Of a stretch of DNA of 64,000 bases, positions 8,920 through 54,667 are shown one piece after another; within the stretch, counting starts at the first letter, position 1; each line of letters begins with the position of its first letter. The notes beneath the pieces are model-generated. The model was given only the letters and a program-made list of their open reading frames with translations. It ran no database searches and was not told the DNA's origin. The DNA is from Octopus bimaculoides (taxonomy: Eukaryota). Made by a program: the position numbers and the translations under genes. The stretch lies in contig NC_068982.1 of the NCBI RefSeq assembly GCF_001194135.2, forward strand, positions 56,921,524-56,985,523, given 5' to 3'.

Positions 8920-8929
8920 NNNNNNNNNN

Positions 8930-22230: not shown

Positions 22231-22957
22231 AAGATTAAGATGGATCACGTAAGTTTATATATATATATATATNNNNNNNNNNNNNNNNNNNNNNNNNNNN
22301 NNNNNNNNNNNNNNNNNNNNNNNNNNNNNNNNNNNNNNNNNNNNNNNNNNNNNNNNNNNNNNNNNNNNNNNNNNNNNNNNNNNNNNNNNNNNNNNNNNNN
22401 NNNNNNNNNNNNNNNNNNNNNNNNNNNNNNNNNNNNNNNNNNNNNNNNNNNNNNNNNNNNNNNNNNNNNNNNNNNNNNNNNNNNNNNNNNNNNNNNNNNN
22501 NNNNNNNNNNNNNNNNNNNNNNNNNNNNNNNNNNNNNNNNNNNNNNNNNNNNNNNNNNNNNNNNNNNNNNNNNNNNNNNNNNNNNNNNNNNNNNNNNNNN
22601 NNNNNNNNNNNNNNNNNNNNNNNNNNNNNNNNNNNNNNNNNNNNNNNNNNNNNNNNNNNNNNNNNNNNNNNNNNNNNNNNNNNNNNNNNNNNNNNNNNNN
22701 NNNNNNNNNNNNNNNNNNNNNNNNNNNNNNNNNNNNNNNNNNNNNNNNNNNNNNNNNNNNNNNNNNNNNNNNNNNNNNNNNNNNNNNNNNNNNNNNNNNN
22801 NNNNNNNNNNNNNNNNNNNNNNNNNNNNNNNNNNNNNNNNNNNNNNNNNNNNNNNNNNNNNNNNNNNNNNNNNNNNNNNNNNNNNNNNNNNNNNNNNNNN
22901 NNNNNNNNNNNNNNNNNNNNNNNNNNNNNNNNNNNNNNNNNNNNNNNNNNNNNNNNN

Positions 22958-23152
22958 TATATATAGTTTTAGGGAAAACAACCAAGTTTCAAGAACTCAT
23001 CGATGAAAATCCACTATCACATATAGAAAAATTAATAATTAAAAGCACAATAAATGAGTATAATATAAAGTAAAGTAAATATCATAAGATAAATATAATA
23101 AAAAGATTACACGTGTTTCATAACTAATTTTCAAATAGAAAAGAAATTTAAA
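22958..23152 (-). mobile_element. Inverted, truncated copy of a PLE-type terminal repeat, ending in (TA)n
   Basis: 23039-23152 is the reverse complement of 23573-23686 at 113/114 nt; the outer end runs into (TA)n at the gap. Confidence 0.65.
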
Positions 23153-23174
23153 ACAATGATAACTTATGTAAGAT

Positions 23175-23354
23175 GGAATATATATGATATTATATACGGT
23201 TAGAGCTTCATTACCTTTATTATTATGTTTATTATTGTTGGGATATCGAGAGGGGTCTTATAGAATAAGATTAATTAGATTATTGTTTGTTGGTGATATG
23301 AGGTTATATTGGATTGTAGGGTTATTATTAGCTTTTTTAGTAAAATTGCCTATA
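23175..23354 (+). pseudogene. ND4: NUMT: internal fragment of mitochondrial NADH dehydrogenase subunit 4
   Basis: In translation table 5: GMYMMLYTVSASLPLLLCLLLL...GLLLAFLVKLPM, the ND4 segment between QPERLQAG and AFLVK.P; TTA-rich and T/G-skewed; no stops. Confidence 0.85.
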
Positions 23355-23393
23355 ATGGATGAAGGGATGATTATTGAATGGTTATTATTTTGA
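23355..23393 (+). pseudogene. Possible second mitochondrial fragment (ND5 N-terminal-like)
   Basis: MDEGMIIEWLLF; an IIEW motif is typical of the ND5 N-terminus (recall); only 39 nt. Confidence 0.4.
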
Positions 23394-23686
23394 TATTATG
23401 ATATTTTTAATAATTTTTCTATCTTTATATAATAAGTATTTCATATTAATTCATTTGGTACTTATTGTTGGTTGAGATATATATATCTAATTATTGTTCT
23501 ACTTACGATCTGACGAGTAGCTATATTTTTGAATAGAATTTATTTTCGATAATTTCAATTGATTTTAATCGATTTAAATTTCTCTTCTATTTGAAAATTA
23601 GTTATGAAACACGTGTAATCTTTTTATTATATTTATCTTATGATATTTACTTTACTTTATATTATACTCATTTATTGTGCTTTTAA
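23394..23686 (+). mobile_element. PLE-type terminal repeat (pLTR) carrying a hammerhead motif
   Basis: Contains the HHR at 23507-23620; AT-rich; runs through a 10-N gap into (TA)n; inverted partial copy upstream. Confidence 0.6.
23507..23620 (+). ncRNA. Type I hammerhead ribozyme motif with long stem II and palindromic stem III
   Basis: GAT / CTGACGA (23510-16) / GTAGCT..AGTTAT stem II / GAAA (23606-09) / ACACGTGT palindrome / A (GUA triplet) / ATC. Confidence 0.65.
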
Positions 23687-23696
23687 NNNNNNNNNN

Positions 23697-23741
<45 letters not shown>

Positions 23742-34394: not shown

Positions 34395-34850
34395 CTTTTT
34401 TTTTCATACCAAATAAACACACCCTCTATATATTCGTTATTCACTCATTTATTAATGTTCTTTTTTATCTTATGTCCATTGTCTGGAAATCTTTCGTGAC
34501 GCATCTGTGACCTCTTCAGTGACCCTTTCTATCCACGTCTATGCTCCAGCTCCGCCTAGTTCATTCTGTTTTATGTCTATCCTTATTTGCGCATACGTTT
34601 GCGTCTGTGTTTGTGTGCGCGCGCACGCGCGTGTACATGCGCATGTCTATGTTTATTGCATGTGTGTGTGTTTATTGGCTTGCCCAGACGGAGCAGGAAG
34701 ATATACGTGGATGGAAAAGGTTGCTGAAGAGATCACAGATGTCTGACGAAAGATTTCCACAAAACGGACACAACATAAAATAAAAACAATAATAAACGAG
34801 TAAAGAACGAATATATAGTACGTGTGTTTATTTGCCAAAAAGAAAAAAAA
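34395..34850. repeat. Long imperfect inverted repeat (arms about 165 bp, about 80% identical, about 120 bp TG-rich spacer)
   Basis: e.g. ggaaatctttcgtgacgcatctgtgacctcttcag versus the reverse complement of ctgaagagatcacagatgtctgacgaaagatttcc; pairing extends to caaataaacacac / gtgtgtttatttg. Confidence 0.85.
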
Positions 34851-42865: not shown

Positions 42866-43789
42866 TGAACCCAACTACTTGCAGACGGTGTATCCCGTTG
42901 AATTCATTAATTTAATTCATAGCAAAAGTGACAAAAAAAGGAAGAAAAGAAAAAGAAAGAAAGAACCATGATTGAGATGGAGATCACTCTTCTTTGTGAC
43001 TGTGTTTCGCAAATCCCCAATAGCAATTAGTAACAAAATAATTCAGCACTATAAATCATATTCTAGTTCTGTGGTGAATAAGTTCTGTCATTTTAAATTA
43101 AAAGTATGTTAGTGCGTGTGCCACATTTTTTATAATTTTTTAGCCAATGTAGAACAGGCCAGTTTGTAACCGAAAATATAGTTCTTTTGTTGAAATTTAG
43201 ACATTAAATGGTTAGTCGTATATTGTGTATATATGTGTACACATAAGCATATGTCACTGCATGTTTGATTCTGCGTGATTTATGCATTTGTAACATATAT
43301 TCGTTTCAATATGCACGTGACTATATGCACTTACAGCTGGCTAGAATTATAGAGTGTTCGACACATTTTCACAGGGTCATTTAAAGTTTATAGCTATATT
43401 TTATTATTTCATGTCCTTTCTGAGTTGGTGAAGCCCAGCTTCCCAAGATTGATGCCTAGGTAGTTATTTACTTATAGTTTATCCATTGTATCATGTCTTT
43501 ATAGACACAGTATCCTCATGACATTTTCTGACAGCTGATTATTAGGTAGGCCACAATTTCAGTGTTAATTCCACAAAACCTTTGAAATTAACACCGAATT
43601 CCACAGATTACGTTGTTCTGCAGCCCTTTACTGTTTGTGAAATATTTTAGTATTTCTTTTTGCTAGATTACCAAAACCGTACTATCATTCTAAAATCTTC
43701 TGAAAACTGAGCATACATGTCCTTTGATTTTTCTTAAATTTATCTAGATGTTTGTCACTTGATGCTTTTGTTTTCATGATTGATAACCC

Positions 43790-44314
43790 GACATCTCAAT
43801 TTAATACTGCTGCTAAAACAGTAAAATATGAGAGTGCTACAGGTATGGCATCAGGTTTTGGAACAACTTATGTTTGTGAGCAAACTTTTTCAAAAATGAA
43901 ATGTGTGAAGTCAATACATCGAACAAGGTTCACTGATGAACATTTGAAAGCAATTCTTACGGTTGGCTGCAGCAATCATAATGCAAATGTTGATGATATT
44001 TTGGAAGCAAAACGCCAGTTTCACAAATCTCATAAACTTTTGTGCTGCTTACTTTTTATGCAATTCAGCTATGTGCACACTTTTTCTAAAAATTCTAACT
44101 TGGTAATATTTTGGTATTATTAACATATGTTTATTATTTTTATTATTTTGTGTATTTTATGTATTGATAAATAAATAGGATGATCGTCTTTATTTTTTGT
44201 GTACATTCAGTGTATTCTATATTGTACTGAATTGAACAAAATATTTATCCGGCCCGCGCTTGGCATTCTTTTAGCTATATTTAGCCCACTATAAAAAAAA
44301 GTTTGGTGCCCATG
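43790..44314 (+). mobile_element. hAT (Charlie/SPIN-like) transposon 3' end: dimerization-domain remnant plus right terminus
   Basis: FGTTYVCEQTFSKMKCVKSIHRTRFTDEHLKAIL...QFHKSH; subterminal cggcccgcg; terminus aaaaagtttggtgcccatg followed by ccttagaa (nnnTAGAn, Charlie-like target). Confidence 0.82.
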
Positions 44315-52624: not shown

Positions 52625-52893
52625 GAATTTACATTATTTACATTATTTACATTTGACGGATATTTGTCCTCATTTTGTTTGATGTTAACACAACGTTTCG
52701 GCTGATATACCCTCCAGCCTTCGTCAGGTGTCTTGGGGAAATTTCGAACCTGGGTTCTCATTCCTAACGATGTTACTATTATTATTATTATTACTATTAT
52801 TAATCAGGTCGCTGCCGTGAATCGAACTCGGAATCGGAATCTTGGGGTTAGTAGCCCGCGCTCTTAACCACTACGCCATATGCCCGTGGGCAT
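52625..52893 (-). mobile_element. tRNA-headed short element with a hammerhead-bearing (PLE-like) tail
   Basis: A box TGGCGTAGTGGTT (52866-52878), B box GAGTTCGATTC (52819-52829), (ATT)n linker, HHR, tail (tgtaaataa)n; 5' palindrome atatgccc-gt-gggcatat. Confidence 0.8.
52687..52732 (-). ncRNA. Minimal type I hammerhead ribozyme motif
   Basis: GACAC / CTGACGA A / GGCTG-gagggtatat-CAGCC / GAAACGTT / GTGTT; stem III reduced to the palindrome AACGTT. Confidence 0.75.
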
Positions 52894-53713: not shown

Positions 53714-54424
53714 GTTTGTTAAGAGTGGGTTTGAATTTCTTAATAAAGTCCTTTTCTCTTAATTTCATTTAAGTTGTAAAGTTTATGGAATGGAAATATC
53801 AAAAAAGTTTTTCGACCACATGTTGCCAGATGGTTACTCAGTGGTATTTGGCGGACCTCTGGGTTTTTAATCTGTTGTCGATGCACACGTGAGCGTTCCG
53901 ATAGTTCATTACCTGTCTGGCCAGCGTACAGTTCTTCACAATTTGGGCATTTGATGCAGTAGATTAGATTTCTACTTCTGCAGTTCATGTTCGAATTGGT
54001 GAATATTTTCCCTGTTTTTGTGTTCATATATGGTCCGGTATGAATTGATTGGCATGTACCGCATCGGCTATCATTGTATTTGGACACAGTGAATGTTTGA
54101 TTTTTGTTGCTGAGGTCAAACCTTGCCTTTGTTAATAACTTTTTCAAGTTTTTAGGTTGTCTCTTACTGAGAGTTATACTTTGATCTGTAATGATATTTC
54201 TCAATTCCTTATTTTGTGCAAGGATCGGTAAGTTCGCTTTAGCGATATTGAAGATGTTCTGGTGGCATGGATTTTGTGTCACTATAAATGGTATGATTTT
54301 TTCCTGTTTTTTTCTTCTTTGCGGTGTCCTCAGTTGTTGTATGGGTATTTTCGAAGCCCGCTGAATACCATTTTCTATGAGTAGTGACGGGTATTTTTGT
54401 TTGAGCAGAAATTCTTTCAGTTCC
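53714..54424 (-). mobile_element. Penelope-like element (Neptune-type) ORF C-terminus: thumb, Cys linker and GIY-YIG endonuclease; 5'-truncated
   Basis: ELKEFLLKQKYP...IPFIVTQNP...KRQPKNLKKLLTKA...RCGTC...NMNCRSRNLIYCIKCPNCEELYAGQTG..L.ER..VHRQQI; a frameshift near 53745 restores the PLE-type end FIKKFKPTLNKQ*; the ATG comes from the (AT)n junction. Confidence 0.92.
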
Positions 54425-54667
54425 ATATATATATATATATATGTGTGTGTGTGTATGTATTTGTGTCTGTGTTTCTCCCCTTTCCATCATCGTTTGACAA
54501 TCGATGTTGGTGTGTTTACGTCCCCGTAACATAGCGGCTCGGCAACAGAGACCCAATAGAATAAGTACTACGCTTACAAAGAATAGGTCCTGGGGTCGAT
54601 TTGTTCGACTAGAGGTGGTGCTCCAACATGGCCACAGTCAAATGACTGAAACAAATAAAAGAAAAAA
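54425..54667 (+). mobile_element. CORE-type SINE 3' half
   Basis: catcgtttgacaatcgatgttggtgtgtttacgtccccgtaac...ggtggtgctccaacatggccacagtcaaatgactgaaacaaataaaag. Confidence 0.88.

What the first reader, a model, noticed from the sequence alone, without database searches (positions are those of the whole stretch)
22958..23730. Mitochondrial ND4 DNA captured between inverted, hammerhead-bearing Penelope-type terminal repeats
Seen: (TA)n, then an inverted repeat arm (23039-23152), about 20 nt of filler, an unbroken ND4 fragment (23175-23354) and a possible second mitochondrial piece, then an AT-rich unit containing an HHR and the matching arm (23573-23686, 113/114 identical), then (TA)n. Known: PLE insertions often carry an inverted truncated pLTR, carry HHRs, and can sit in microsatellites. 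Inference: mitochondrial nucleic acid was incorporated at the inversion junction of one recent PLE insertion, i.e. a NUMT made by PLE template switching or repair. I do not know a described case of this route, but could not check the literature.
Basis: partly seen in the sequence, partly recalled or inferred. Interest (0 to 1): 0.85.

Follow-up and report, generated by a model that had tools for sequence, protein, structure and literature searches.

The report
Mitochondrial ND4 fragment between inverted repeats
A 180-base piece of the octopus mitochondrial ND4 gene is embedded in AT-rich non-mitochondrial DNA between two inverted copies of a repeat carrying a hammerhead-ribozyme-like motif, but it lies on a small contig fenced by assembly gaps and no link to a Penelope-like retroelement could be shown.

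Summary
The core observation holds. Window 23174-23353 is a 180-nt ND4 fragment: 171/180 identical to the Octopus bimaculoides mitogenome, without gaps, and 58/60 amino acids (codons 139-198). It is the only mitochondrial piece in the 64-kb window. It lies between inverted arms, 23039-23152 and 23573-23686 (113/114, 102 nt perfect). The arms and the remaining AT-rich DNA are no more mitogenome-like than shuffled sequence. The proposed "second mitochondrial piece" is not supported.

Rfam finds no hammerhead, but it also misses a textbook min-hammerhead at 52687-52732. My own descriptor finds a complete hammerhead core at 23507-23620. About 0.003 such hits are expected per shuffled window, and it is the only hit among 720 permuted-core controls. 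Only the right copy carries it whole; the left copy is cut inside helix II.

Three caveats:
- The 729-bp island is bounded by gaps on both sides (685 N and 10 N).
- (TA)n tracts are everywhere in this assembly, so the flanking microsatellite carries little weight.
- No RT/GIY-YIG link could be tested.

The ND4 piece differs by 5% from the reference mitogenome, almost only at synonymous sites.

Verdict: a real NUMT in an inverted, hammerhead-bearing repeat. The Penelope-like-element capture route is plausible but unproven.

The parts
22256..22272 (.). (TA)n at the end of the left neighbouring contig, followed by a 685-N gap (22273-22957)
22958..22965 (.). (TA)4 at the left end of the 729-bp island contig
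22966..23038 (-). 73-nt AT-rich segment outside the left arm. It is not mitochondrial. It may be the 3' extension of the left repeat copy; its counterpart on the right would fall in the gap.
23039..23162 (-). Left arm: the shorter, inverted copy of the repeat. It holds only the 3' half of the hammerhead (GAAAC-ACGUGU on the minus strand at 23109-23120) and is truncated inside helix II.
23163..23173 (.). 11-nt junction stretch. Over 23161-23173, 8/13 bases match the mitogenome just upstream of the ND4 piece, so it is either filler or a decayed edge.
23174..23353 (+). NUMT: ND4 codons 139-198, sense on the + strand. 171/180 to the O. bimaculoides mitogenome. Eight differences are at codon position 3 and one at position 1; eight are synonymous and one is I/M. 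The right junction is sharp.
23354..23506 (+). AT-rich segment of unknown origin. It is not mitochondrial and is not a third copy of the arm. It may be the 5' part of the longer right copy.
23507..23620 (+). Hammerhead-type motif. Helix I: 23507-23509 / 23618-23620. Core CUGACGA: 23510-23516. Helix II: 23517-23523 / 23599-23605, continued by 13 bp 23525-23537 / 23586-23598. G12 A13 A14: 23606-23608. Helix III: A15.1 C15.2 / G16.2 U16.1 inside the palindrome ACACGUGU at 23609-23616. Predicted cleavage after A17 at 23617.
23563..23686 (+). Right arm: the part of the longer copy that is shared with the left arm. It ends exactly at the gap.
23687..23696 (.). 10-N assembly gap of unknown true length and content
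23697..23739 (.). (TA)21.5 at the start of the right neighbouring contig

Best explanation
The island is a head-to-head pair of 5'-truncated copies of an AT-rich, hammerhead-bearing repeat. The repeat is a Penelope-like element, or a non-autonomous element that such elements mobilise, and the 3' ends of the two copies point outwards.

The left copy retains 124 nt, or up to 197 nt if 22966-23038 belongs to it. The right copy retains at least 180 nt and possibly 333 nt, and it includes the whole ribozyme motif.

The two inner ends had to be joined during integration. At that step a 180-bp stretch of mitochondrial ND4 was captured as filler, most likely as a fragment of mitochondrial DNA taken up by end joining.

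Shown:
- the ND4 identity of the fragment;
- its junctions with non-mitochondrial DNA;
- the inverted copies;
- the hammerhead-type core.

Inferred:
- that the repeat is a retroelement of the PLE type;
- that the two copies and the ND4 piece arrived in one event;
- that the contig truly lies at this chromosomal site.
For: - **ND4 piece.** It is 95% identical to the host-type mitogenome over 180 nt without gaps. Its flanks within the same contig are not mitochondrial.
- **Real NUMT, not mis-assembled mitochondrial reads.** The 9 differences fall at codon position 3 (eight) or are a synonymous Leu change (one), so the source was a coding mitochondrial lineage 5% away from the reference.
- **Inverted copies.** They match 113/114 and have different inner end-points.
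- **Hammerhead core.** The core is complete and has a 7-bp helix II that continues as a long hairpin. Helix III is palindromic and the cleavage triplet is GUA.
- **Not chance.** Expected hits are 0.003 per shuffled window at this helix II length and 3.5e-4 per shuffled island. It is the only hit in the island among 720 permuted core-box controls run on the real sequence.
- **Published PLE anatomy.**
  - Inverted 5'-truncated copies adjoin the element, and some clades prefer (TA)n targets (PMC8557442).
  - PLE min-hammerheads have a long helix II, a short helix I and a palindromic helix III, and occur in pairs on opposite strands 100-700 bp apart (PMC4209133).
  - A PLE protein cleaves and extends both target strands in vitro (PMC11167929), which would give two converging cDNAs that need joining.
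- **Timing.** Arm divergence (1/114) and the absence of obviously nuclear-type changes in ND4 are compatible with one event.
Against: - No RT or GIY-YIG coding sequence is in or next to the island.
- The arms do not match the PLE fragment at 53.7-54.4 kb or anything else in the window.
- The copy number of the arms in the genome is unknown.
- The hammerhead has G10.1 paired with U instead of C, lacks the unpaired base after A9, and has a helix I of only 3 bp. No second copy exists to test covariation.
- Rfam models do not score it, although they also miss the control.
- (TA)n tracts are so common here that the flanking microsatellite says little.
- The contig is bounded by gaps on both sides.
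- 153 nt (23354-23506) remain unexplained.
- Nothing separates a one-step origin from a two-step origin.
Confidence: 0.36

Rival explanations
1. Two independent events. An inverted pair of AT-rich repeat copies was already present. Such a pair can fold into a hairpin or cruciform and is prone to breakage. Later, a double-strand break between the arms was repaired by ordinary non-homologous end joining, which captured a fragment of mitochondrial DNA. This is the standard route for NUMTs.
For: - The ND4 piece lies in the spacer between the arms, and its right junction is sharp.
- The inner 22 nt of the arms are degraded (17/22) while the outer 102 nt are perfect, as expected if the centre was damaged.
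- The island is 17-29% G+C and palindromic.
- By established knowledge, NUMTs arise by end-joining capture at breaks and favour AT-rich DNA.
Against: - An independent hit exactly in the few hundred bases between the arms needs the extra assumption of fragility.
- Arm divergence (0.9%) gives no sign that the arms are older than the NUMT.
Confidence: 0.28
2. Reverse-transcriptase template switching. While copying the right element RNA, the element's RT jumped from its 5'-truncation point onto ND4 messenger RNA and copied 180 nt. The end of that cDNA was then joined to the short left copy. On this reading the NUMT is RNA-derived.
For: - The ND4 sense strand is collinear with the sense of the right, hammerhead-bearing copy, as this model requires.
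- The junction at 23353/23354 is sharp.
- The fragment lies entirely within one transcript.
Against: - The orientation match is a 50% coincidence.
- There is no RNA-specific mark such as a poly(A) tail, a processed end or editing.
- It is unknown whether 23354-23506 belongs to the element at all.
- By established knowledge, NUMTs are generally DNA-derived.
- No such case turned up in the literature searched.
Confidence: 0.1
3. Assembly artefact. The 729-bp contig is a chimera, or a correctly assembled NUMT-bearing contig placed at the wrong scaffold position. The terminal inverted repeat would be a fold-back produced by the assembler or gap-closer.
For: - The island is bounded by 685 N and 10 N.
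- The right arm ends exactly at the contig end, and its last 102 nt are a perfect reverse complement of an internal stretch.
- PLE-type inverted structures are known to trouble short-read assemblies (PMC8557442).
Against: - The ND4 piece is 5% diverged from the mitogenome, so it is not made of ordinary mitochondrial reads.
- Arm similarity decays gradually at the inner end (a mismatch, then 17/22) instead of stopping abruptly as in a fold-back chimera.
- A contig ending at a repeat boundary is normal assembler behaviour.
Confidence: 0.12
4. The 648-bp unit 23039-23686 is a non-autonomous DNA transposon or foldback element with 114-124-nt terminal inverted repeats. It picked up an ND4 fragment internally. 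The hammerhead-like motif would be incidental.
For: Long, nearly perfect terminal inverted repeats. TA-rich flanks are compatible with TA target sites.
Against: - The hammerhead core is unlikely to be chance, and hammerheads are not a known feature of DNA transposons.
- The left arm is followed by 73 nt of unique sequence before (TA)n, so the ends are not symmetric.
- No target-site duplication can be read because of the gap.
Confidence: 0.07

Closest known systems
NUMTs (nuclear mitochondrial DNA segments) formed by end-joining capture of mtDNA at double-strand breaks
   Same: A short internal fragment of a mitochondrial gene (ND4) joined on both sides to non-mitochondrial DNA. It lies in AT-rich surroundings, has sharp junctions, and has no function of its own.
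   Different: It sits exactly between two inverted copies of a hammerhead-bearing repeat. Nuclear placement rests on a contig fenced by gaps. Its differences from the reference mitogenome are almost all synonymous and are split between both branches.
Penelope-like element insertions with an adjacent inverted 5'-truncated copy, pseudo-LTRs and min-hammerhead motifs (Cervera and De la Pena 2014; Craig et al. 2021)
   Same: Head-to-head copies with different inner end-points. The hammerhead core has a long helix II, a short helix I and a palindromic helix III. A (TA)n neighbourhood. Extra sequence beyond one outer end.
   Different: No RT/GIY-YIG ORF and no tandem pseudo-LTR. Helix II carries a roughly 75-nt hairpin. 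G10.1 pairs with U and there is no unpaired base after A9. The outer extension is 73 nt rather than 30-40. There is no similarity to the PLE fragment in the same window.
Non-LTR retrozymes and hammerhead-bearing SINE-like repeats of animals (non-autonomous PLE derivatives)
   Same: A short non-coding AT-rich unit with a type I hammerhead whose helix III is palindromic, which suits action as a dimer.
   Different: No head-to-tail tandem array. Only one complete ribozyme is present. Circular RNA is not testable here.
Twin priming / inversion junctions of LINE-1, and filler DNA at retrotransposon or break-repair junctions
   Same: Two converging truncated copies whose inner ends must be joined. 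Foreign DNA sits at the joint.
   Different: The filler is mitochondrial, and the element type would be PLE rather than LINE. I found no described case in the papers searched.
Palindromic AT-rich repeats prone to centre breakage
   Same: An AT-rich near-perfect inverted repeat with foreign DNA at its centre and degraded inner arm ends.
   Different: The spacer is 400 nt, so this is not a true palindrome today. Breakage is inferred only.

Membership tests
NUMT | Clear homology to the host lineage's mitochondrial genome | tested here: met
   171/180 nt to the O. bimaculoides mitogenome with no gaps. 58/60 aa of ND4. 84% to NC_006353.
NUMT | Joined to non-mitochondrial DNA on both sides | tested here: met
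   The flanking segments of the same uninterrupted contig score no better against the mitogenome than dinucleotide shuffles. Junctions are shown.
NUMT | Located in a nuclear chromosome | tested here: inconclusive
   The contig is separated from the unique flanks by 685 N and 10 N. Placement rests on scaffolding that I cannot check.
Hammerhead ribozyme (type I) | Conserved core C3 U4 G5 A6 N7 G8 A9, G12 A13 A14, A15.1-U16.1, and H17 not G | tested here: met
   CUGACGA at 23510-23516, GAA at 23606-23608, A23609-U23616, A17 at 23617.
Hammerhead ribozyme (type I) | Three helices around the core, more than chance would give | tested here: met
   Helix I is 3 bp, helix II is 7 bp plus a 13-bp continuation, and helix III is 2 bp within an 8-nt palindrome. 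Expected hits are 0.003 per shuffled window. It is the only hit among 720 permuted-box controls in the island.
Hammerhead ribozyme (type I) | Match to a curated hammerhead covariance model (Rfam) | tested here: inconclusive
   No match even at E<=10. The same models also miss the textbook min-hammerhead at 52687-52732.
Hammerhead ribozyme (type I) | Self-cleavage at the predicted site; conservation and covariation among copies | not testable with these tools
   No other full copy is available and no experiment is possible.
PLE min-hammerhead (Cervera and De la Pena 2014) | [quoted passage not shown] | tested here: not met
   G23517 pairs with U23605. No register with a bulge gives a helix. The features are listed in PMC4209133.
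PLE min-hammerhead (Cervera and De la Pena 2014) | Long helix II (7-8 bp), short helix I, palindromic positions 15.2-16.2 and loop 3 | tested here: met
   Helix II is 7 bp, helix I is 3 bp, and the palindrome is ACACGUGU. However, helix II is closed by a roughly 75-nt hairpin, which is atypical.
Penelope-like element insertion | RT plus GIY-YIG ORF in the element itself or in related copies | tested here: not met
   There is no such ORF in the island. The arms have no similarity to the GIY-YIG-bearing fragment at 53740-54426 or to anything else in the window. A genome-wide link is not testable with these tools.
Penelope-like element insertion | Tandem pseudo-LTR and/or an adjacent inverted 5'-truncated copy | tested here: met
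   The inverted copy is present. No tandem copy is present.
Penelope-like element insertion | Microsatellite target and a 30-40-bp tail at one end | tested here: inconclusive
   (TA)n lies on both sides, but across gaps. (TA)n tracts occur about every 2 kb and 10 of 14 gaps abut one. The one-sided extension is 73 nt.
Non-LTR retrozyme | Head-to-tail tandem repeats, each with a hammerhead | tested here: not met
   Tandem Repeats Finder and the direct-repeat search show no such array.
TIR DNA transposon / MITE | Terminal inverted repeats flanked by a target-site duplication; many copies | tested here: inconclusive
   Inverted repeats are present. The right end runs into the gap, so no duplication can be read. 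Copy number is not testable.

The most novel reading that the evidence does not exclude
The integration intermediate of a Penelope-like element, or of a hammerhead-bearing element it mobilises, captured mitochondrial nucleic acid. The two converging truncated copies made from both target strands had to be joined, and the capture happened at that head-to-head joint. On this reading, PLE-type retrotransposition is a route of NUMT formation. Capture would be either of mtDNA as filler or of ND4 mRNA by RT template switching.
Probability: 0.3. Interest if true: 0.65.

Novelty: new member of a known kind. Interest (0 to 1): 0.35.

Why it matters
If the single-event reading is right, this locus links two processes normally treated apart: organelle-to-nucleus DNA transfer and the poorly understood integration step of Penelope-like elements. 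That step produces inverted copies whose joining mechanism is unknown. Filler at that joint would be a natural record of how the intermediate is resolved.

The locus also holds a hammerhead variant with a very long helix II that curated models do not detect. This suggests that hammerhead-bearing repeats in cephalopod genomes are under-counted.

As it stands, what is demonstrated is an ordinary short NUMT in an unusual repeat context, in a draft assembly. Its value is as a lead that a few BLAST searches and long reads could settle.

Tried and rejected
- **Rfam scans.** I scanned the region, the island alone at E<=10, and the whole window. There was no hammerhead. I do not treat this as evidence, because the textbook min-hammerhead at 52687-52732 is also missed.
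- **ARAGORN on the island.** No tRNA was found.
- **Pfam on island translations.** Nothing was found.
- **First protein search.** The 86-aa table-5 translation found nothing. This was a false negative of the word index: the full-scan search found a cirrate octopod ND4, and searching with that protein and listing the O. mimus cluster reached the Octopus and then the O. bimaculoides ND4.
- **Second mitochondrial piece at 23354-23393, and an exact 16-mer shared with ND4 (island bases 505-520 = window 23462-23477).** Neither is significant against shuffles.
- **A third, degenerate arm copy in 23354-23562.** This was suggested by two short repeats, but it is not significant.
- **Mitochondrial origin of the arms, including the control region.** Rejected.
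- **Microbial or viral contaminant origin of the arms.** An exact 22-mer from the arms is absent from the metagenome, prokaryote-genome and viral collections. This is a weak test.
- **Independent contigs carrying the island.** I looked up the exact ORF products and found none on record. The same was true of the GIY-YIG ORF.
- **CTGAAGAG...CGAAA strings at 34.5-34.7 kb.** These are arms of an unrelated inverted repeat, not hammerheads.

Full report
**1. What is at the coordinates**

The finding's span is not continuous genome. Bases 22958-23686 form a 729-bp island of 22% G+C. It lies between a 685-N gap (22273-22957) and a 10-N gap (23687-23696).
- The contig to the left ends in (TA)n, and the contig to the right starts with (TA)21.5.
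- (TA)n tracts are very common in this window. There are 30 tracts of six or more units in 64 kb.
- Ten of the 14 gaps abut a (TA)n tract. The other 10-N gaps at 8920 and 27860 lie inside (TA)n.
- "Sits in a (TA)n microsatellite" is therefore weak evidence. The 10-N gap is most simply a placeholder for unresolved repeat.
- Continuity across either gap cannot be tested without reads.

**2. The inverted repeat is real**
- 23039-23152 and 23573-23686 match 113/114, and the similarity extends to 124 nt at 96%.
- The outer 102 nt are perfect. There is one mismatch at 23141/23584, and the innermost 22 nt match 17/22.
- This gradual decay argues against a simple fold-back chimera.
- The arms occur nowhere else in the window.

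**3. The ND4 piece is real, and it is Octopus ND4**
- The only solved-structure hits of the table-5 translation were mammalian ND4 residues 146-210, at E = 0.045.
- A full scan of 1.8 billion representatives gave one hit, ND4 of the octopod Cirrothauma magna.
- Against 120 cephalopod ND4 proteins, the best were O. mimus (87%) and O. vulgaris (82-83%).
- The O. mimus cluster contains O. bimaculoides ND4, which the piece matches at 58/60 residues.
- At the DNA level, window 23174-23353 matches the O. bimaculoides mitogenome NC_029723 (L002 7243-7422) at 171/180 without gaps. It matches NC_006353 at 84%.
- It is the only mitochondrial segment in the whole window.
- The right junction (23353/23354) is sharp. 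To the left, 8 of 13 further bases match, which is ambiguous.

**4. What the nine differences say**
- Eight are at third codon positions and one is a first-position synonymous Leu change. Eight are synonymous and one is I/M.
- With NC_006353 as outgroup, four changes are on the island's branch. All four are to G at third positions, which fits the strand's positive G-over-C (GC) skew.
- Four more changes are on the reference branch, and one is ambiguous.
- The source was therefore a functional mitochondrial lineage about 5% from the reference mitogenome. It was a sister lineage rather than a direct ancestor.
- So the piece is not made of ordinary reads of the reference-type mitochondrion. This supports a genuine NUMT and speaks against "one recent insertion", unless the sequenced animal's own mitogenome differs from the reference. 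I could not check that.
- That the host is O. bimaculoides or a very close relative is itself an inference from these identities.

**5. The rest of the island is not mitochondrial**
- I scored the 73-nt left segment, the arms and the 209-nt stretch between ND4 and the right arm against both strands of the mitogenome. None scored better than dinucleotide shuffles, whereas the ND4 piece scored 315 against a shuffle maximum of 55.
- A suspected third, degenerate arm copy is also not significant.
- A 22-mer from the arm is absent from the metagenome, prokaryote and viral collections.

**6. The hammerhead**

Rfam gave nothing for the region, for the island alone at E<=10, or for the window at gathering scores. 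I then wrote a descriptor requiring:
- CUGANGA;
- helix II starting at the core;
- GAAA;
- helix III with A15.1-U16.1;
- H17 that is not G;
- helix I of at least 3 bp.

It finds exactly two sites in the 64-kb window.

The first site is a textbook PLE-type min-hammerhead at 52732-52687(-):
- It reads GACAC-CUGACGA-A-GGCUGG...CAGCC-GAAAC-GU-U-GUGUU.
- It lies in a SINE-like unit about 1 kb 3' of a GIY-YIG ORF.
- Rfam misses this one too, even at E<=10 on a 221-nt slice. The Rfam negative is therefore uninformative.

The second site is in the island, at 23507-23620(+):

| Element | Coordinates | Sequence or pairing |
|---|---|---|
| Helix I | 23507-23509 / 23618-23620 | GAU/AUC |
| Core | 23510-23516 | CUGACGA |
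| Helix II | 23517-23523 / 23599-23605 | GUAGCUA/UAGUUAU |
| Helix II continuation | 23525-23537 / 23586-23598 | 13 further pairs in the minimum-energy fold |
| G12 A13 A14 | 23606-23608 | GAA |
| Helix III | 23609-23616 | inside the 8-nt palindrome ACACGUGU |
| Cleavage | after A23617 | GUA triplet |

Chance expectation for the island site:
- 3.5e-4 per shuffled island, and none in 20,000 shuffles at a helix II of 7 bp or more.
- 0.003 per shuffled window at that helix II length.
- I also kept the real sequence and permuted the two core boxes. The true boxes were then the only one of 720 combinations with a hit in the island, and the only one with two hits in the window.

Departures from the published PLE min-hammerhead (PMC4209133):
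- G10.1 pairs with U rather than C.
- There is no unpaired base after A9.
- Helix II is closed by a roughly 75-nt hairpin.

I conclude that a hammerhead-type motif is present. Activity is untested.

**7. How the motif sits on the repeat**
- The CUGACGA half lies outside the arm.
- The half from GAAAC to the cleavage site lies inside the right arm. It is therefore also present, reversed, in the left arm at 23109-23120.
- So the right copy is the longer one and carries the whole motif. The left copy is cut inside helix II.
- "Hammerhead-bearing terminal repeats" in the plural is not accurate.
- The geometry is what two 5'-truncated copies with outward 3' ends would give: two copies, outer ends aligned, inner ends at different points.

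**8. Comparison with what is known**
- Published PLE insertions often carry an inverted 5'-truncated copy next to the element.
- Naiad elements often insert preferentially into (TA)n.
- PLE insertions are known to confuse short-read assemblies (PMC8557442).
- Min-hammerheads occur as pairs on opposite strands 100-700 bp apart.
- A purified PLE protein cleaves and extends both target strands (PMC11167929).

From this I infer a plausible mechanism: two converging cDNAs whose inner ends are joined, with ND4 captured at the joint. The ND4 sense strand is collinear with the longer copy, as an RT template switch onto ND4 mRNA would require, but that is a 1-in-2 coincidence. Capture of an mtDNA fragment by end joining is the more conservative step.

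Against membership in the PLE family:
- There is no RT/GIY-YIG ORF here.
- The arms do not resemble the window's PLE fragment.
- I had no means of searching the octopus genome for other copies.

**9. Rivals**
- A later, independent end-joining insertion into a breakage-prone inverted repeat fits the degraded inner arm ends about as well.
- An assembly artefact remains possible because of the two gaps and because the contig ends exactly at the arm. The 5% divergence of ND4 and the gradual decay of arm identity speak against it.
- A DNA transposon with long terminal repeats is the least likely, given the hammerhead.

**10. Novelty and verdict**
- Literature searches for NUMT together with Penelope, or with template switching, found no described case. 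No paper links hammerheads with O. bimaculoides.
- What is demonstrated is a new instance of a known kind: a short NUMT in an uncommon setting.
- The PLE-coupled capture is an attractive reading that a handful of genome-wide searches and long reads would settle.
- Interest is moderate-low (0.35).

Noticed in passing
window 52687-52890 (- strand): SINE-like unit. It has a head with tRNA-type A-box-like and B-box-like stretches (not called by ARAGORN), then an (ATA)n run, then a textbook PLE-type min-hammerhead at 52732-52687: GACAC-CUGACGA-A-GGCUGG..CAGCC-GAAAC-GU-U-GUGUU. Rfam does not detect it even at E<=10.
   Followed up: partly
window 53740-54426 (- strand): 228-aa ORF with a GIY-YIG endonuclease-like C-terminal part. 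The Pfam GIY-YIG match has E = 6.9e-4, just under the gathering score. It is probably the 3' remnant of a Penelope-like element. No intact RT ORF lies upstream, and a microsatellite plus a 90-N gap lie 3' of it.
   Followed up: partly
window 34487-34530 and 34715-34760: An inverted repeat of about 45 nt flanks roughly 190 nt of low-complexity GC-rich sequence. It contains CTGAAGAG...CGAAA strings that look hammerhead-like but fail the helix tests.
   Followed up: partly
whole window: There are 30 (TA)n tracts of six or more units in 64 kb. Ten of the 14 assembly gaps abut a (TA)n tract, and most of the rest abut other microsatellites. Contig breaks in this assembly are largely microsatellite-driven.
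   Followed up: yes
window 23174-23353 compared with L002 7243-7422 and L001 7247-7426: Of the nine ND4 differences, four are derived on the island's branch. All four are changes to G at third codon positions. The source mitochondrial haplotype was therefore a sister lineage of the reference mitogenome, which may reflect old polymorphism, a different population, or introgression.
   Followed up: partly
tool behaviour: The word-indexed protein search returned nothing for the 86-aa ND4 translation. Yet proteins 87-97% identical over the 60-residue ND4 stretch are in the collection. Short AT-biased queries can be false negatives there.
   Followed up: yes
window 43752-44123 (+ strand): A 123-aa ORF that resembles, from memory, the C-terminal dimerisation region of hAT-type transposases. 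Pfam gave no match at E<=0.01.
   Followed up: no
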